Below, piece by piece: positions 14,824-22,206 of a stretch of DNA of 64,000 nt. The translations under genes were made by a program, and so were the position numbers. The stretch lies in NCBI GenBank assembly GCA_001949185.1, contig BDGG01000001.1:3613324-3677323 (forward strand). Reading direction: 5' to 3'. The notes beneath the pieces were generated by a model. It ran no database searches. It had not been told where the DNA came from and saw only the letters and a program-made list of their open reading frames with translations. Every line of letters begins with the position of its first letter. Position 1 is the stretch's first letter. This stretch comes from Ramazzottius varieornatus. Taxonomy: Eukaryota; Animalia; Tardigrada.

Positions 14824-16875
14824 TTATTCATACACGTAGAGGTCCCAGGCAGAGTCCTTGCGCCCCAAAAGAGCTTCGCGCTCAGCGACTCGCTGCTTTC
14901 TTCTTAGCTGACTCTTTTGCAGGATCTGATTTCGTACAGCTTCTACCCTTGGAAGGTTGTGAGCTCCTTCCCGAATCTCTTTGAGCTTCTTGGCCTTGTC
15001 GTTGAAGTGTCTTTTCTGTTCTTCCCAAACTGGACGTGCCTTCTCGATGAAGGTCCTCGCTTCTACCAAGATTCCTTTGGTCGCCTCCTGCTCGACCATA
15101 ATTTGAGACTTCCTTCGGGCCAGCTTCTCAATAGTCTCGAAGCGAAGGGAAATCAGCCGATCTTGCAGGTCGGCCAGCGACATGTCAGTCAAGTTGCCGT
15201 ACTGGGGCATCTCGCCGAAATCGAAGACCCGCTCGTAGTTACTGATTCTTTTCTCCATCTCTTGGATCTGGGCGATCACTTCCTTCCTTCGCTGAAACTC
15301 CACTTCGCACTGATCAAGATACCTGAGTGAAACATACGTTACAAAACCAAACGAAACTTCAGACAAGGAGTTTTTGTCGACATACCGCTGGTAGAGTTCG
15401 TTGTTTGCTTCTTTGACTTCCAGCGCCATCTGCTGTTTCTCTTCTAGTATCCTTTTTCTGGCGACCCCTAACTGCGACCTGGCATTCAACTGAGCCTCCA
15501 CCACTGCAGCTCTCGACCTCGCGATTTCCTTTTCCATCATCTCGCGCCGTTGGTCCTGCAGCTGTTTCTTTTGCTCCTTCTCCCATACAGCCTTCGCCTT
15601 GGTCTCCTCAATATACGTATTCCGGGCCGCGATAGCATTCTCTAGAGTCTGCATGGCGTCGATGATTTTCCTCTCGTTCTCCACGACCATCCGTTCCATG
15701 TCCTTTTCTTCCAGCTGACGTTGCCGCTTTTCCATCTCTTCCGGATTCCAGAAGCCAGCCGCCAACTCTTCGGCGATCTTTTGATTATTTTCTTTGTGCT
15801 TGGCGAAGAGAGCCTTTTCCCTCAGGATGCCAGCCGCAGTTTGACGCACGGGTCTGGTCTTTTTCGGCCGTGTAACCTCCTTCTGAGGGTTCGCCACAAG
15901 AGTTGAGGGTTTCTGTTCGGGAGCTGTGACAGGGCCTATTCTCTCTTCCATTTCTTCCCGGTGGACTTCGATCAACAATCTTGACGCAGCGCGGCGAACC
16001 TTTGGGCGGGATGGCCGAGCTTGTTTCTCCAAAGCCGCGCTTTTTGCAGCAGCTCGTTGTTTCTGTCGTTGGGCTATTCTTTGCCGAAACGTTTCCGTCC
16101 TCGCAGTTCGCTCGTTCGCTTTCGCCTGCAGTTCCACCGTGCTAGCAGAGGGTCTATACTTCGTTTCCGGAATTTCATTAGCAAGAAACTCGACTGCCGA
16201 AGCGTTAGCTTCCAACTGGGAAGATATTGGTCGTTGTTTCGGAGCTCTTTGACGTGTGTGGGTTCTCAAACCAAAAGGCTGTGGAATGGTCGGTCGTCTG
16301 GGCTTTTTCTGTTTTCCGTTCTGATAAACGTCTTCCAGCTGCAGAACAATTCTTCTTAGTTCCTCTTCAATCTCACAGTAGGGGCCGTACACATATTTCT
16401 CAATAAAGTCTCGGTCGAAGTTGACGTACCAGTCAGCCTTGATCTCGTTATGAATGGGCTTCTTTTGGCTTTCCACATTAGTCTTCTGGTCAACTCCCAC
16501 CAGAAACAGCAAGAACTTCCGTATGCTGAAGGAGTACAGGTGATCTAGCACAGCTTGCACGACAGGCAGTGGATGGAGTCTCCACTGGAATATTGTAAAG
16601 TAGGTGAGGACTTTACAGAGCTGGAGGTCTTTTCGGAGCGTAATGCGACTGGTTTGTTTTGCGAAGGGCGATACGACGCTTTGAAGTATCTTGTTATGCC
16701 GCAGACAGTTTTCACACAGAATCAACAAGTCAGCTTGCTGTTCAACGGAGATCGACTTGTTCTCTTTCTTTAGGAACTCCCGAAAGAACTGCCAGAGACT
16801 GATGGGCTGCGCCGGATCGAATGTGTCCAGAATGGATGTGGATAACGTGATGATTTCGATCAGCTTTTCCGCCAT
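14824..16875 (-). CDS. CFAP99: Cilia- and flagella-associated protein 99-like
   Basis: Long ORF with PTIPQPFGL, TAAGILRE, an extended coiled coil and YGNLTDMSLADLQDRL, as in CFAP99. Probable 63-nt intron 15323-15385; start codon uncertain. Confidence 0.75.
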   Translation of the reverse strand: MAEKLIEIITLSTSILDTFDPAQPISLWQFFREFLKKENKSISVEQQADLLILCENCLRHNKILQSVVSPFAKQTSRITLRKDLQLCKVLTYFTIFQWRLHPLPVVQAVLDHLYSFSIRKFLLFLVGVDQKTNVESQKKPIHNEIKADWYVNFDRDFIEKYVYGPYCEIEEELRRIVLQLEDVYQNGKQKKPRRPTIPQPFGLRTHTRQRAPKQRPISSQLEANASAVEFLANEIPETKYRPSASTVELQAKANERTARTETFRQRIAQRQKQRAAAKSAALEKQARPSRPKVRRAASRLLIEVHREEMEERIGPVTAPEQKPSTLVANPQKEVTRPKKTRPVRQTAAGILREKALFAKHKENNQKIAEELAAGFWNPEEMEKRQRQLEEKDMERMVVENERKIIDAMQTLENAIAARNTYIEETKAKAVWEKEQKKQLQDQRREMMEKEIARSRAAVVEAQLNARSQLGVARKRILEEKQQMALEVKEANNELYQRYVDKNSLSEVSFGFVTYVSLRYLDQCEVEFQRRKEVIAQIQEMEKRISNYERVFDFGEMPQYGNLTDMSLADLQDRLISLRFETIEKLARRKSQIMVEQEATKGILVEARTFIEKARPVWEEQKRHFNDKAKKLKEIREGAHNLPRVEAVRNQILQKSQLRRKQRVAEREALLGRKDSAWDLYVYE

Positions 16876-17159
16876 CGCCGAGTACAAAATTAGTAATATT
16901 CAGACTTCCGCACTTAACAATGTGGAATCGGCAGCCAGGCATTCTGCTTGAAAGTTCGGCAGGAGGACATGTTATTTATTTTTCCGTGCCTACAGGTATG
17001 TCAATGGAAGAATACTGAAGTTGCCAGTCAGCAAATGGCAGACTATCGAAAGGTAAATCAGAAATTATTATCATGCGAAACAATATTATGTAGTATGCTC
17101 TAACCATAAAAATACGTATCACAGAATAGAACAGGAAGAAAGATACTCGCTTTATTCCA

Positions 17160-20100
17160 TTACACGAGCGGACAGGTGGGTCGGGGAACCGCCATATCGG
17201 ATTCAGTCTCCTTGGCCATGTTCTCCCCATATTGTTTCAGCAGGCCCGATATCACGAGTGGCCAATACTCTTGATGTGCGTCTGACTGGAAGAAGCCTCG
17301 GAACGAAAACACCCAGGAAAGAACTACAGAGTGTAAGTCAGAACGGAGGAGTAGGTCCTTGATCTGAATGGCATCCAAGATACCAGCAGCCAACAGGTCG
17401 ATGTTTCCATCCGTGTCAAACTGCTCCAGCAGCTCAGAGACGCGCTTGACTATCGCACTGTGGAGATCCTCCTTGAACCAACAGCTGTCGGAGATCCGTA
17501 AGAGATGTAACTTGGCTCGTTCAAGAATGCCTGGGCCTGAAATCGTTGTGAGGTCCCAACCCGGAACGTTGTTCAGGAAGGACTTCAGTCTGTTCATCCC
17601 GTCGTCGAAAAGATCGGTCGCGACCGTCCTCTAAGAAAAACAAAATTTGTCCAAGTCTCATATTCCGGAAGCAAATATTTCCCATCCGATTTCTAAATTG
17701 TTGATAACTACTTTTTTAGATTTAATTTTCGAAGTCGGTTTTTTAACTAAATTTCTCTTTAAAATTTTCAGTCAGTTGACTCTACCTTGAGAAGAAAGAG
17801 TGGTATCTCGTCTTGGAGTTTGATCAACCGATCATCCAGGTTAATTAAAATCCGCCCCCGTAACGCCGCCATCGGGTCCAGACAAGAACTCTTTATCAAC
17901 GGCGAGACCATCGCGTTAATCGCTTCTTGTGTGTAGAAGTTCCATGCAGCTCTCTTGCTGTGGTTCTTCAAGTGCGCTTCTTTCGCCACGTTGAAACCCG
18001 ACTTGAAGTTAGTATACGCTAGCGAAACATTGACCACAGCATGGAATCCGCCAGCTATGGCATCCGGTAGTGCACAGCGGACAGTCGACACAACGATCTT
18101 TCCTTCCTGTTCTTGCAAACTCACCTCTTGGTTACACTCGACACACCCGGGTGAACAGCACTTGATGAACGTAAAGAACTCGTTCAGAGTGCAGAGTTTC
18201 CTGTGCATACTCCATGTCAAAAGACATGTCTCGTAGAACGACGCACTGGGGAAGAGAACGAGAACATTACCGGGAAGGACTTCGAGGATGTTAAGGAGGA
18301 CTTGACCGATGGTGAGGATGTTTCTCGAGTCGTTCTTTGCGGCGGCGATGAAGCTAAGCCGAACTTTGTCGGGGCCCGCGTATAGCAGCGCGGAATGAAG
18401 ATTTGCTGTTTGTATTGCGTTCTGCTTCTACAAAATGAGAGACAGTGATACGCAATCTCCAGAAAATGCCTTTTAGAGGAATGGGCAGTTCGGCAAACAA
18501 CCTCGACAGGATTGCTTTCCCAAGTGGCGCACTTTTTCACTGTCATCGGCTGAAAAGGTGCGCCACTTGGGAAAACGATTTTGCGAAGTTCGTTATAGTC
18601 CAAGCGATATTTCTATGAAGTACCTCCAAAAGAGTCGCTGGGTATATTGTCAGAATATCTGCAGGAAGCACGCTGAAGGACACCGGGACCATAACACCAA
18701 TCGTGACTAAACAAGGAACTCTCATGCTTTTCAGCGCTTGGAGTGCTGGGCTCGACGAAACCCCGAAGAACTTGTAAGTCTTTAGGTTTGGCTTCTGGTT
18801 TGCAAACGTATCGTTGTCGAACCAGAATCGGAAAGGCACATCTTTGTCTTTTGACAACGTCCACCGGACCACGTCGAGGTTCATCAGGTTGAGAAACAGC
18901 TGCTGGATCTGTAACCACGCTTTCAAAACACTGGGGCGAAGTTTCGACTGGAAGCTCGGCAGAGTCGCATCGGCTATGAAGCTCGTTATTATTCTGTGAG
19001 AGCTCGTCGGACTCAAGTGGGATAAGCCAAGAATACCGAGAATTTTGCCGAGATCTGGACTACTTCCCTCTTCCAAAATCCAGTATAACTGTAAAAAAAT
19101 TCGTCTGACCAGGAACGACCAAGAAACCAGAACCAGTATACAAATTTTCTCACCCGTTCCAAGAACTGAACGATATCACGCAGGGCGTTTTCCGCTTCAT
19201 TCCTTTCAGGCTTGTTTTCTGCGAACACCACGTCATACGTCTGCCTTACGAACACCGCTCTCTCATGTCCGAACGTGATAGCATGTCGAAGATCGAAGGT
19301 GGATAGGGTAAAGTCGTAACAGCAATCGAAGGTTCTTTCCAGTGCGAACATATCGTCACAGAGAAGAAAGGTACTCTCGTCCAGCGGAAGTCTTTCGCCT
19401 ACAGGTCTCGAACCATTCAGCGTTTCCTTCAACGCACCGTATGTGGTAACTATAAGATGTGAACTGCTCATCCGGTAAAGAAGGGAGTAGTACGGACAGC
19501 ATTTTGCGGTACTGAGAAGACGAAGAACCTCATCGAGTTCGGGCAGAAAGTCTGGAATCGTAGATTTCTGGACTGAATCGTCGAAAGTGTTCTCGTAAGG
19601 CTTGTACTGTCCAAGCTGAACTTTCATCCGACAGGCAGCGTTCTTTTCCGACTGTGTCTGTGAGGAGAAAGCAAAGCTAGAATAAGGAAGCCCATATAGA
19701 GAGTCCACTTTCTTGACGACGTACTTACATGTTGCTTACTTTGTGCATCTTTCTGAAGTTCTTGCTATACGAACACACGTCAGCCGGGTCTCCCACCGCA
19801 GTTATCCTTATGCAGTCCAGTTCAGGAAGGCTGAGCTTCCGTTTCAAGCGGTGGAGGAGCGAGATGGTGGCTTTGACGCTGTAGACTCCGTCACAAACGT
19901 ACAGTAAACGTGGCGTAACAGATGGTGCTCCTGTAAAGGAAAGAGCCTCCACAGGGACTTCGGTTGATTGATCGGCTCCATGATTGACGATCTTCATTTT
20001 GTATAAAATAAATGACAACATTGCAGACCAAAGTGCTTCTTGAAGTTGATAAATTTGATCCGGTAGCTCCAGGGCGGAGTATCTTGTGCCTGCCGCCAAC

Positions 20101-20210
20101 TGCTGGACGAACCTGCAGATCACAGTGTCCATTTGGGAATCAGTATCCGACGGAAGGTGCACTTTAACATCAGCAACACGGACAGTCCGGTAAGTGGCGT
20201 GCTCGTCCAT
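17160..20210 (-). CDS. RTEL1/FANCJ (XPD-family) derived protein with degenerate helicase motifs; 5 exons, ~850 aa
   Basis: Exons 20210-19740, 19657-19154, 19088-18624, 18427-17786, 17630-17160, all phase 0, join into one ORF. Collinear RTEL1 blocks: PRLLY, CRMKV, CCPYY, GPDKVRLS, LPGNVLVLFPS, FYTQEAINAM, LDDRL, and a harmonin-homology-like C-terminus. Confidence 0.8.
18495..18595. repeat. Palindromic element (N27 family) in intron 3 of the RTEL1-like gene
   Basis: caagtggcgca 18521-18531, 27-nt spacer, tgcgccacttg 18559-18569. Confidence 0.8.
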
Positions 20211-20848: not shown

Positions 20849-22206
20849 ATGTTAGGAGATCATGGATTAAAACTGTCTGTAGTAGATCCTGAAGTGGAGA
20901 CGGTTTCTGAGCCTGGCAGTGGTGATTCCACCAAGCAAGAAAACAGTCCAGATTCACAGCAACAAGTTGCTCATGTTACTCTCTCTTCTCCTCCTGAACA
21001 CTCATCTGCCTCGACAACTGCTGAGAAAAAAGATTCCGATCTCTTAGATATTTCGGTGGACGAATTAAAAGTTGACTCCTCCGTTTCTCATGAAGTTGCA
21101 GAGCAACTCACAGCAGTTACACAGCCTGGAAATGCCTCAGAGTCCTCAGCTGACGGTGAAATTGCAAATGAAGGCCAAACAGAACCCTCTAGTATACCTG
21201 AAAATTCTCCACAACAGTTTGCACAAGGTAAATGATTTTGGACACGTGTACTCTTTGGTAAAAGCAACAACCTATTTTTTCCATCCAGGTAATGACCCAA
21301 TTCTTCCAACGGATCCGGATCTGACTCACTGGGTACACATTGACGACTGGGAAGAACGAAAGCACTGGTTTCACCAAGGTGATCTAGTCGAATTCTACCG
21401 AGGGAACGGACTGTACAACCACTGGGGAGTCTACATGGGCAATGGGTGTGTGGCCCATGTCACGACCTTCAACCTCATGACTTCGTCGACAAGTGTCCTT
21501 AAAGCCATAAACATCGCTGGCATGTTCTTCCCCTCCGTCACGAAGCATCCACTGGCTACGGCGATAACAGTGGGGACTTCAATGTGCATTCAACTCGGAG
21601 AAATGATGATAGGTACAGGAGGAGTTAGCATGTGTGACCCAGTGAGGAAATGTGTGACCCAGTAGTCTCAGACGGCGCATCCATAGAAAAGCATGAGACA
21701 CTCGTAATTAAAATAAAGCTTATGACGTAAAGAATTACAGTGTTGTTTATCTTACATAAAAAGTGTTTCTGTTAACGTGATGCATACTTGATACATGTCA
21801 CGCCGTCTGAGACTACTGGGTCACACATGCTTACTCCTCCTGTACTTTTGTTTTGCGGAATTTTTCTGTCTAGTTACGATCAACTTTACCTCGTTTGGAG
21901 TCAACGTGGAAAATGTCCCGTTTGTTTTTAGCGCCCTCGCCTCCGGATCCAGCGAACAACGATCTGTACTACTACAGAATGGACCCGATAGTGATTGTGG
22001 CAGGAACCGATCAGTTCCGGGTGAACAATCTGGCTAAGAGGGCAAAGGACCATGTGGCGAGGACCTGGGAGGAAACATTCAAGCTGGTTCACGAGAGGAT
22101 TAATACGGTGCATAAGTATTCGCTTCTGAGAAACAACTGTGAACATATCGCCACGTTCTTCCGGTACAAGCCTAAGGAGAGCGGAAAGAAACCTCGAACG
22201 GAATAA
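20849..22206 (+). CDS. LRAT/PLAAT (HRASLS, NlpC/P60) domain phospholipase/acyltransferase with acidic disordered N-terminus
   Basis: GDLVEFYR..YNHWGVYMGNGCVAH (H-box) and YSLLRNNCEHIATFFRY (NCEH catalytic Cys). Introns ~21229-21288 and 21613-21930. Confidence 0.88.
21616..21842. mobile_element. Tc1/mariner-type MITE with TA TSD
   Basis: TA|caggaggagttagcatgtgtgacccagt...actgggtcacacatgcttactcctcctg|TA. Confidence 0.85.

What the first reader, a model, noticed from the sequence alone, without database searches (positions are those of the whole stretch)
17160..20210. Full-length, intact RTEL1 paralog with every helicase motif destroyed: a candidate XPD-family pseudohelicase
Seen: five exons with canonical phase-0 introns join into an uninterrupted ~850-aa ORF. 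Known: RTEL1/FANCJ motifs occur in a fixed order. Compared by eye with remembered RTEL1 sequence, the spacing matches but the catalytic residues are replaced. Walker A ESPTGTGKT reads ELPDQIYQL; motif Ia YASRTHSQ reads YVCDGVYS; DEAH reads DDMF; motif III TSGT reads TIGV; motif V RGKxSEG reads RCALPDA; motif VI QAIGRVIR reads SPLIKSSC. Scaffold blocks persist (CCPYY, GPDKVRLS, LPGNVLVLFPS, LDDRL). Inference: keeping a long open frame after losing all ATPase motifs implies selection for a non-catalytic role, such as a scaffold, a DNA/G4 clamp or a dominant regulator of RTEL1 in telomere or meiotic crossover control. I am not aware of a described pseudoenzyme in this family.
Basis: partly seen in the sequence, partly recalled or inferred. 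Interest (0 to 1): 0.9.

Follow-up and report, generated by a model that had tools for sequence, protein, structure and literature searches.

The report
Dead RTEL1-like helicase paralog in tardigrades
This tardigrade gene encodes an intact 850-residue relative of the RTEL1/XPD DNA helicases that has lost its ATP-using residues, is conserved in other tardigrades, and has a relative that is switched on about 26-fold by radiation, so it is probably a non-enzymatic DNA-damage-response protein.

Summary
On the minus strand (20210..17160), five exons joined by four GT..AG phase-0 introns give an 850-codon frame. It has a start codon, a TAA stop and an AATAAA signal.

Exons 2 and 4 match the XPD-family Pfam domains. 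At every site I could align to canonical RTEL1, the catalytic residues are replaced: Walker A, DEAH and motifs III, V and VI.

The same genome (55.84 Mb, which fits Ramazzottius varieornatus) also has four canonical paralogs. The RTEL1, XPD, FANCJ-like and DDX11 loci each show intact catalytic motifs. The window gene is therefore a fifth, degenerate copy.

It is not a decaying pseudogene:
- Hypsibius exemplaris BV898_04573 is collinear with it, 36.8% identical, and has similarly replaced motifs.
- Three more fragments from other sources share the replaced motifs V and VI.
- Conservation clusters at the former motifs and in a C-terminal helical domain.

RTEL1 is the nearest canonical paralog by score, but no RTEL1-specific ARCH or HHD domain is detectable.

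A supplementary table of an eLife 2024 paper lists a Paramacrobiotus fairbanksi transcript whose best hits are BV898_04573 and RvY_01248. It rises about 26-fold 4 h after 1000 Gy and is labelled tardigrade-specific. The paper's text does not discuss it.

Expression in this species, dN/dS and the mechanism were not tested. The telomere or meiosis role has no support. A DNA-damage-response role is better supported.

The parts
19740..20210 (-). Exon 1 (aa 1-157). Covers the N-terminus, the former Walker A site ELPDQIYQL (20043-20069), the former motif Ia region YVCDGVYS (19878-19901) and Fe-S Cys 1 (DVC, 19767-19781).
   Evidence: The N-terminus is collinear with RTEL1 N-termini and with P0002.
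19154..19657 (-). Exon 2 (aa 158-325). Fe-S Cys 2 is present (AAC, 19625-19639). Cys 3 is replaced by Tyr (QLGQYKPY, 19595-19618). Cys 4 is present with an extra neighbouring Cys (KCCPYY, 19487-19504). The former DEAH box reads DDMF (LCDDMF, 19346-19363).
   Evidence: Pfam DEAD_2 E 8e-4, 19.5 bits. hhalign against the RTEL1 profile gives E 2.3e-5 in register. Coordinates.
18624..19088 (-). Exon 3 (aa 326-480). Arch-like helical insertion and the former motif III, TIGV (18693-18704).
   Evidence: It aligns to P0002 278-410 at 34.6% identity. There is no Pfam ARCH_RTEL1 hit.
17786..18427 (-). Exon 4 (aa 481-694), the second RecA-like domain. Contains GPDKVRLS, LPGNVLVLFPS, a family-specific C-x4-C-x2-C (CCSPGCVEC, 18134-18160), the former motif V RCALPDA (18059-18079), the former motif VI SPLIKSSC (17882-17905) and LDDRL.
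   Evidence: Pfam Helicase_C_2 27.6 bits against a cut-off of 25.3. hhalign against RTEL1 gives E 1.9e-7. Family alignment; coordinates.
17160..17630 (-). Exon 5 (aa 695-850 plus the TAA stop). A conserved all-helical C-terminal domain with blocks at 17367-17432 and 17232-17270.
   Evidence: 35.9% identity to the P0002 C-terminus, with blocks at 60-70%. Predicted all-helical, but with low confidence when folded alone. In the P0002 model this domain has pLDDT of about 70-86. The resemblance to an HHD is not significant.
17151..17156 (-). AATAAA polyadenylation-type signal, 4 nt after the stop codon.
   Evidence: read from the sequence; its use was not tested.
19658..19739 (-). Intron 1 (82 nt, GT..AG, phase 0).
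19089..19153 (-). Intron 2 (65 nt, GT..AG, phase 0).
18428..18623 (-). Intron 3 (196 nt, GT..AG, phase 0). It holds a small foldback repeat.
17631..17785 (-). Intron 4 (155 nt, GT..AG, phase 0).

Best explanation
The locus is a real, selectively maintained protein-coding gene, almost certainly RvY_01248 of Ramazzottius varieornatus. It encodes a tardigrade-lineage paralog of the XPD/Rad3-type Fe-S helicases, and its nearest canonical relative is RTEL1.

What it keeps: the four-part architecture of the family. That is the first RecA-like domain with an Fe-S-type insertion and an Arch-like insertion, followed by the second RecA-like domain.

What it has lost: the residues that bind and hydrolyse ATP. 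These are the Walker A Gly-Lys-Thr, the DEAH Glu and His, and the motif VI Gln and Arg. It therefore cannot act as a motor. This last step is inferred from established knowledge of SF2 helicases.

The replaced motifs are themselves among the best conserved blocks between species. Two other features are also conserved: a family-specific Cys triad in the second RecA-like domain, and a helical C-terminal domain.

Most likely mechanism (inferred, not shown): it works without ATP as a static binder of DNA structures and/or an adaptor for repair proteins during the DNA-damage response. The link to damage comes from a Paramacrobiotus fairbanksi relative that is induced about 26-fold by gamma rays.
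For: Gene integrity.

Homology to the XPD family:
- Pfam Helicase_C_2 over cut-off in exon 4, and DEAD_2 at E 8e-4 in exon 2.
- DEAD_2 at 47 bits in the ortholog P0002.
- P0002 against yeast Rad3, E 8e-11.
- Family alignment against an RTEL1 profile, probability 99.9%, E 3.8e-33.
- AlphaFold2 model of P0002 (pLDDT 69, pTM 0.56) matches XPD/Rad3, 8rev, DinG and CasDinG, best E 3e-20, TM about 0.6.

Motif loss.

Canonical paralogs in the same genome: four loci were found. Motif strings found in their open frames are:
- RTEL1: GTGKT, SRTHSQ, DEGH, TSGT, RGKISEG, QSLGRAIR.
- XPD: Walker A, DEAH, motif V and motif VI.
- FANCJ-like: GSGKS, DEGH, RGKISEG.
- DDX11: DEAH, GGKLSEG.
The degenerate gene is single-copy.

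RTEL1 is the nearest relative:
- The family HMM scores 42.1 + 22.6 bits on the RTEL1 locus, against 20.0 for XPD, 13.3 for the FANCJ-like locus and nothing for DDX11.
- P0002 against 120 RTEL1 proteins has a median of 60 bits, against 44 for Rad3 and 28.7 for Chl1 at the same database size.

Conservation:
- A HMMER scan of 1.84 billion cluster representatives found only four family-level relatives: H. exemplaris BV898_04573 and three fragments.
- The window exons are 36.8% identical to P0002 over 688 positions, collinear from the N- to the C-terminus.
- Former motif blocks are 50-68% identical and C-terminal blocks 60-70%.
- Identical positions are clustered; 0 of 5000 shuffles reach the observed variance.

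Expression and induction of a relative: in PMC11233135, Figure 4-source data 3, transcript Pfai_geneID_rb_5849 has mean counts of 1000 (irradiated) against 38 (untreated), log2FC 4.71, padj 1.3e-37. Its Origin is 'TardiSpe'. [quoted passage not shown]

Genome identity: G000 is 55,842,812 bases, against 55.83 Mb for the R. varieornatus 1.1 assembly.
Against:
- No codon-level dN/dS.
- BV898_04573 was not found in the stored parts of the H. exemplaris and A. antarcticus tables of the same paper. Those tables were cut when stored, so induction may be lineage-specific.
- That RvY_01248 is this locus is inferred from the scaffold, the gene number and single-copy status. It was not checked by sequence.
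- The full-length fold was predicted for the Hypsibius ortholog, with RTEL1 rows in the alignment, and not for the window protein.
- In the window species one of the four Fe-S cysteines is a Tyr, so cluster binding is uncertain.
- DNA binding and partner binding are pure inference.
Confidence: 0.66

Rival explanations
1. It is a decaying, unexpressed pseudogene copy of a helicase gene that happens still to be open.
For: All catalytic motifs are lost. There is no RNA evidence for this species. It evolves fast: 36.8% identity to Hypsibius, while the genome's canonical RTEL1 is 32-49% identical to a sea-spider RTEL1.
Against: - An 850-codon frame with four intact GT..AG introns, a start codon, a stop codon and AATAAA. 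The chance of no stop is about 3e-18.
- A collinear full-length ortholog in H. exemplaris and fragments from three other sources.
- Conserved positions are clustered in blocks.
- A P. fairbanksi homolog is transcribed and strongly induced.
Confidence: 0.03
2. It is still an active NTPase or helicase that uses non-canonical residues.
For: The first Asp of the Walker B box is kept, with a second Asp next to it (DDMF here, DDPF in Hypsibius). The replaced motifs are conserved between species, which shows the cleft is still under constraint.
Against: There is no GxGK[ST] anywhere in exon 1. The motif VI arginines and the motif V Gly-Lys/Ser-Glu are also gone, in every family member that covers those sites. 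From established helicase biochemistry, a single Walker A Lys substitution abolishes activity in XPD, FANCJ and RTEL1.
Confidence: 0.05
3. It is a pseudohelicase, but it derives from XPD, FANCJ or DDX11, or is an old separate branch, rather than from RTEL1. The RTEL1 affinity would then be an artefact of score comparison on a long branch.
For: - No ARCH_RTEL1 or HHD_RTEL1 match.
- Of three RTEL1 introns located, two have no counterpart here and one lies about 6 residues from one of ours.
- In the large scan with exon 4, the next-best hits are a mix of DDX11-like and RTEL1 proteins.
- The best structural hits are XPD. The PDB hit lists showed no RTEL1 helicase-core chain to compare with.
Against: - The family HMM and single sequences score RTEL1 clearly above the other three paralogs of the same genome.
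- P0002 scores a median of 60 bits on RTEL1 proteins, against 44 on Rad3 and 29 on Chl1.
- NCBI names the P. metropolitanus homolog an RTEL1 homolog.
- MAFFT twice placed the C-terminal domain opposite the RTEL1 HHD, and hhalign gave P = 0.012 in that register.
Confidence: 0.2
4. It acts mainly as a decoy or regulator. It would compete with canonical RTEL1 (or other Fe-S helicases) for shared partners or for the Fe-S delivery machinery, rather than binding DNA itself.
For: The Fe-S-type cysteines are kept: 4 of 4 in Hypsibius and 3 of 4 here. The C-terminal domain is conserved. The genome's canonical RTEL1 shows no detectable HHD, so a division of labour is conceivable.
Against: There is no evidence of any interaction. 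No complex prediction was run, because no specific pair is claimed. This reading is compatible with the main explanation and is a sub-case of it.
Confidence: 0.15

Closest known systems
[quoted passage not shown]
   Same: It is the best-scoring canonical relative. The domain order is the same. The N-terminal beta-hairpin block, the Fe-S-type cysteines with CPYY, GPD, the LVFFPS strand and the CDxRF-like end all align.
   Different: All ATPase and motor motifs are replaced. No ARCH_RTEL1 or HHD_RTEL1 Pfam match, and no RING or long C-terminal tail (850 aa). It has a family-specific C-x4(7)-C-x2-C insertion in the second RecA-like domain. A separate canonical RTEL1 exists in the same genome.
XPD/Rad3 in TFIIH
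   Same: The best solved-structure matches, by sequence and by fold. From established knowledge, XPD's role in transcription initiation is structural and does not need its helicase activity. That is a precedent for a non-catalytic use of this fold.
   Different: XPD keeps all its motifs and is an active helicase in nucleotide excision repair. The window protein scores lower against the genome's XPD than against its RTEL1.
Described pseudohelicases of other families (yeast Utp25, Deinococcus radiodurans PriA)
   Same: A helicase fold is kept, the catalytic motifs are degenerate, and function is retained (titles and abstracts: PMC9539457, PMC4504706).
   Different: These belong to other helicase families (DEAD-box-like, PriA) and to other pathways. 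My searches found no described pseudoenzyme of the XPD/RTEL1 family.
[quoted passage not shown]
   Same: Restricted to tardigrades, and strongly induced 4 h after 1000 Gy in the same P. fairbanksi data set.
   Different: No sequence relationship was seen. TDR1 is reported as induced in all three species studied and was shown to bind DNA. For this family, induction is documented only in P. fairbanksi, and nothing biochemical is known.

Membership tests
XPD/Rad3-like SF2 Fe-S helicase superfamily (homology) | Helicase_C_2 (PF13307) domain | tested here: met
   Exon 4 scores 27.6 bits against a cut-off of 25.3. P0001 scores 32.2 bits. The own-genome scan gives 26.8 bits at this locus.
XPD/Rad3-like SF2 Fe-S helicase superfamily (homology) | DEAD_2 (PF06733) domain | tested here: inconclusive
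   Window exon 2 scores 19.5 bits, just under the cut-off of 21. The own-genome scan gives 20.3 bits, or 21.1 with its neighbours. The ortholog P0002 scores 47.2 bits, over the cut-off.
XPD/Rad3-like SF2 Fe-S helicase superfamily (homology) | Four-domain XPD fold | tested here: met
   Tested on the ortholog P0002 only. The AlphaFold2 model has pLDDT 69.3. Foldseek top hits are XPD/Rad3 and 8rev at E 3e-20 to 1e-15, TM 0.57-0.68. The alignment used for the fold included RTEL1 rows.
Active XPD-family helicase (enzyme) | Walker A GxGK[ST] | tested here: not met
   ELPDQIYQL lies opposite ESPTGTGKT. Hypsibius has ELFDQSYQT.
Active XPD-family helicase (enzyme) | DEAH box (Walker B) | tested here: not met
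   DDMF lies opposite DEAH. Hypsibius has DDPF (alignment).
Active XPD-family helicase (enzyme) | Motifs III, V and VI (TSGT, RGKxSEG, QxxGRxIR) | tested here: not met
   They read TIGV, RCALPDA and AMVSPLIKS. The state is equally degenerate in each of P0001-P0004 that covers the site.
Active XPD-family helicase (enzyme) | Four cysteines of the 4Fe-4S domain | tested here: inconclusive
   The window has Cys 1, 2 and 4. Cys 3 aligns to Tyr in QLGQYKPY, and an extra Cys sits next to Cys 4. Hypsibius keeps all four. Cluster binding cannot be tested with these tools.
RTEL1 orthogroup | ARCH_RTEL1 (PF23109) domain | tested here: not met
   No hit in exon 3 or in P0002 at E up to 10, while the control RTEL1 P0010 scores 146 bits.
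RTEL1 orthogroup | HHD_RTEL1 (PF23116) harmonin-homology domain | tested here: inconclusive
   - No Pfam hit.
- An HMM built from 165 RTEL1 HHDs scores 1.1 bits, no better than shuffles.
- hhalign gives P = 0.012, probability 3.6%, in the expected register.
- The Atlas structure search gives TM 0.28-0.34 to RTEL1 clusters.
- Exon 5 folded alone has pLDDT 46.8.
RTEL1 orthogroup | Being the genome's one-to-one RTEL1 ortholog | tested here: not met
   The ortholog is at G000:C2:2734-2737 kb. It scores 404 bits against Nymphon RTEL1 and has intact motifs.
Pseudoenzyme (pseudohelicase) | Homologous fold, catalytic residues lost, and maintained by selection across species | tested here: met
   Homology and motif loss are as in the rows above. 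Orthologs have similarly replaced motifs, frames are intact and conservation is clustered. Codon-level dN/dS was not available.
Pseudoenzyme (pseudohelicase) | Expressed | tested here: inconclusive
   A P. fairbanksi homolog is transcribed and induced by radiation.
Pseudoenzyme (pseudohelicase) | Lack of ATPase or unwinding activity shown in an assay | not testable with these tools
   This needs the recombinant protein.

The most novel reading that the evidence does not exclude
This would be the first described pseudoenzyme of the Fe-S (XPD/RTEL1/FANCJ/DDX11) helicase family. On this reading it is a tardigrade-restricted, radiation-inducible, ATP-dead RTEL1 derivative. It would have turned the helicase cleft and a new Cys triad into a static DNA-structure or partner-binding module, and it would contribute to the exceptional DNA-damage tolerance of tardigrades.
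Probability: 0.4. Interest if true: 0.8.

Novelty: new variant of a known kind. Interest (0 to 1): 0.6.

Why it matters
Tardigrade radiotolerance research has so far named few lineage-specific factors, such as Dsup and TDR1. This gene has a recognisable fold, is conserved across two superfamilies that PMC11233135 states diverged more than 250 My ago, and has a relative that rises 26-fold after 1000 Gy. It sits unnoticed in a supplementary table as 'tardigrade-specific, hypothetical'.

For helicase biology, it would be a natural experiment showing what an XPD-type scaffold can do without ATP. It is directly testable by RNAi or CRISPR in H. exemplaris and by simple biochemistry: ATPase activity, Fe-S absorbance, and DNA binding.

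Tried and rejected
- Exons were searched one by one by reference, and the full-length fold was done on the Hypsibius ortholog P0002 instead. In one search the exon nucleotides were pooled only to count bases and codons.
No ortholog DNA was available, so there is no dN/dS and no comparison of synteny or introns between species.
- The metagenome scan with the family alignment found nothing.
Pfam, an own-built HHD HMM, hhalign, the Atlas and AlphaFold2 all gave nothing significant.
- A search for RTEL1 HHD relatives of P0007 by region returned only Nymphon isoforms.
- Intron positions against the genome's RTEL1: of three RTEL1 introns located, two have no counterpart here and one lies about 6 residues from one of ours. 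This is uninformative about the age or mode of duplication.
- No subfamily phylogeny was built. Only RTEL1 sequences could be collected in number, and the other three subfamilies were available only as exon pieces from this genome. Score comparisons were used instead.
- Literature: nothing on BV898_04573 in main texts, nothing on tardigrade RTEL1, and no XPD-family pseudoenzyme. RvY_01248 and BV898_04573 are absent from the stored supplements of PMC9145152 and PMC5531438. PMC11413396 has no stored supplements.
- The neighbouring ORFs (14827-16872 on the minus strand, 20849-21232 on the plus strand) have no Pfam match.
- No complex prediction was run, because no specific binding pair is claimed.
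Full report
**Anatomy**

The gene lies on the minus strand. I located the splice junctions by pattern and translated each exon by reference.

- The exons are 20210-19740, 19657-19154, 19088-18624, 18427-17786 and 17630-17160.
- Each exon length is a multiple of three, so all four introns (82, 65, 196 and 155 nt) are phase 0. All begin GT and end AG.
- The frame runs from ATG at 20210 to TAA at 17162-17160, 850 codons without a stop.
- An AATAAA follows the stop by 4 nt.
- At this base composition, an open frame of that length has a chance of about 3e-18. For that count only, I pooled the exon bases.
- Every search used single exons by reference.

**Is it an XPD-family protein?**

Yes, by several independent measures.

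- Exon 4 matches Pfam Helicase_C_2 at 27.6 bits (cut-off 25.3). Exon 2 matches DEAD_2 at E 8e-4.
- NCBIfam rad3 (TIGR00604) hits both exons far below its cut-off, as expected for a very divergent member.
- A HMMER scan of 1.84 billion cluster representatives with exon 4 found only eight proteins. The best four are family-level relatives:
  - P0002, which is Hypsibius exemplaris BV898_04573. It is 806 aa and is named 'hypothetical protein' (NCBI) and 'RAD3-like helicase DEAD domain-containing protein' (UniRef).
  - Three fragments from a JGI metagenome and from Logan assemblies.
- P0002 matches yeast Rad3/XPD in the PDB at E 8e-11 and Chl1 at 3e-6.
- A family alignment against a profile of 24 RTEL1 helicase cores gives hhalign probability 99.9%, E 3.8e-33, over 662 columns.
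- Window exons 2 and 4 alone reach E 2.3e-5 and 1.9e-7 in the correct register. Exons 1, 3 and 5 alone do not.
- An AlphaFold2 model of P0002, built with the family plus 38 RTEL1 rows, has pLDDT 69.3 and pTM 0.56. Its best solved-structure matches are XPD/Rad3 in TFIIH and a chain of 8rev, which names CHL1 helicase. These score E 3e-20 and TM about 0.6. DinG and CasDinG follow.

**Are the motifs really gone?**

Alignments with real RTEL1 sequences place the window residues opposite the canonical motifs as follows.

| Canonical motif | Window | Other family members |
|---|---|---|
| Walker A ESPTGTGKT | ELPDQIYQL | ELFDQSYQT (Hypsibius) |
| Motif Ia PKIIYASRTHSQ | PRLLYVCDGVYSVKATIS | exact pairing ambiguous |
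| DEAH | DDMF | DDPF (Hypsibius) |
| Motif III TSGT | TIGV | TFGT, AYGT |
| Motif V RGKVSEG | RCALPDA | RGAALDG, RGATLDG, RGSTLDG, RCAGMAG |
| Motif VI QAIGRVIRH | AMVSPLIKS | AASPWIRAT, ALPFIKAT, AAPFVKTS |

- Of the four Fe-S cysteines, the window protein keeps the first, second and fourth. It has Tyr at the third and an extra Cys beside the fourth. Hypsibius keeps all four.
- All four family members that cover the region share a C-x4(7)-C-x2-C in the second RecA-like domain. The RTEL1 profile shows no such Cys pattern at that place. This is a candidate new metal site.

**The rest of the genome**

- The assembly has 55,842,812 bases in 200 contigs. That fits the 55.83 Mb given for R. varieornatus 1.1 in PMC5531438.
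- Scans with PF13307 and PF06733 find five loci. By scores against known proteins and by motifs, they are:
  - XPD at C3:4.07 Mb
  - RTEL1 at C2:2.73 Mb, scoring 404 bits against Nymphon RTEL1
  - DDX11 at C3:0.72 Mb
  - a FANCJ-like gene at C9:0.17 Mb
  - the window gene
- The RTEL1 locus has GTGKT, SRTHSQ, DEGH, TSGT, RGKISEG and QSLGRAIR. The other three canonical loci also show intact catalytic motif strings in their open frames.
- The degenerate gene is single-copy.

**Which subfamily does it come from?**

- A family HMM scores 42.1 + 22.6 bits on the genome's RTEL1 exons. It scores 20.0 on XPD, 13.3 on the FANCJ-like gene and nothing on DDX11.
- Single sequences behave alike.
- P0002 scores a median of 60 bits on 120 RTEL1 proteins. 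At the same database size it scores 44 bits on Rad3 and 28.7 on Chl1.
- Against this, neither ARCH_RTEL1 nor HHD_RTEL1 is detectable.
- Of three introns located in the genome's RTEL1, two have no counterpart here and one lies about 6 residues from one of ours.
- I rate RTEL1 descent as likely but not proven.

**The C-terminal domain**

- Exon 5 is 35.9% identical to the Hypsibius C-terminus, with blocks of 60-70%. It is predicted to be helical.
- MAFFT twice placed it opposite the RTEL1 harmonin-homology domain.
- The statistical tests do not support that placement. An HMM of 165 RTEL1 HHDs scores it no better than shuffles. hhalign gives P = 0.012 and probability 3.6%. Atlas structural matches are weak. 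Pfam finds nothing.

**Selection**

- I could not get ortholog DNA.
- The indirect evidence is still strong:
  - The gene has a full-length collinear ortholog at 36.8% identity.
  - The frames are intact.
  - The replaced motifs are conserved as replaced: 50-68% identity at the former motif sites.
  - Identical positions are clustered, with 0 of 5000 shuffles reaching the observed variance.
- The family evolves fast. The genome's canonical RTEL1 is 32-49% identical to a sea-spider RTEL1, and the two are in different phyla. The window gene is only 36.8% identical to its Hypsibius ortholog, although both species belong to the same superfamily.

**Expression and function**

- The supplement of PMC11233135 (Figure 4-source data 3) covers P. 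fairbanksi 4 h after 1000 Gy gamma rays, n = 3. It lists transcript Pfai_geneID_rb_5849 with these values:
  - mean counts 1000.39 (irradiated) against 37.94 (untreated)
  - log2 fold change 4.71, adjusted p 1.3e-37
  - no human, worm or fly homolog; Origin 'TardiSpe'
- The paper's text mentions neither RTEL nor helicase.
- RvY_01248 lies on scaffold 1. Its number fits a position near 3.63 Mb, by my own estimate of gene density. The family is single-copy here. I therefore take it to be this gene, which is an inference.
- According to the paper, Macrobiotoidea and Hypsibioidea diverged more than 250 My ago.
- BV898_04573 does not appear in the stored (cut) parts of the H. exemplaris or A. antarcticus tables. 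Induction outside P. fairbanksi is unknown.

**Mechanism**

- Shown: the XPD-family fold and order of parts, the loss of the ATP-site residues, conservation across tardigrades, and radiation induction of one homolog.
- Inferred from established SF2 helicase biochemistry: there is no ATP hydrolysis and hence no translocation or unwinding.
- Inferred, and my best guess: the protein acts without ATP in the DNA-damage response. It would be a static binder of ssDNA or branched DNA through the retained channel between the two RecA-like domains, the Fe-S-type domain and the Arch-like domain. Alternatively or additionally, it would be an adaptor through its conserved C-terminal domain.
- A decoy role towards RTEL1 partners is a sub-case.
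- Nothing here supports a telomere or meiosis role.

**Novelty**

- The gene is in public annotation as a hypothetical protein, and NCBI names the P. metropolitanus copy an RTEL1 homolog.
- I found no paper that describes it, and none that describes any pseudoenzyme of the XPD/RTEL1 family. Pseudohelicases of other families are known.
- I class it as a new variant of a known kind.

Noticed in passing
window 18496-18594 (intron 3 of the gene): A small foldback repeat with 44-nt arms, 77% complementary, 11 nt apart. Its core, CCAAGTGGCGCAC, or a one-mismatch variant, occurs six times in the window (0.07 expected). Similar translated strings appear in ORFs of the FANCJ-like locus L004. It is probably a MITE-like element that is common in this genome.
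   Followed up: partly
G000:C2:2734-2737 kb (L019): The genome's canonical RTEL1 has all helicase motifs. However, the own-genome scan with Pfam HHD_RTEL1 found no match at this locus, or anywhere else in the genome at E below 1. Its C-terminal part may be short or very divergent.
   Followed up: partly
P0002 (H. exemplaris BV898_04573), residues about 53-60: Compared with the window protein, the Hypsibius model lacks about 65 residues between the former Walker A site and the first Fe-S cysteine. This covers the motif Ia region. It could be a real deletion or a gene-model error, and could not be checked without the DNA.
   Followed up: no
window 14824-16887 (-) and 20849-21235 (+): The flanking long ORFs have no Pfam match. 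One is a 687-aa Lys/Glu/Gln-rich ORF just downstream of the gene. The other is a 128-aa ORF about 640 nt upstream of the start on the other strand, which may share a divergent promoter region.
   Followed up: partly
G000:C9:162-172 kb (L022): The FANCJ-like paralog has a Walker A reading GSGKS and a DEGH box. Its gene is split into many short exons.
   Followed up: no
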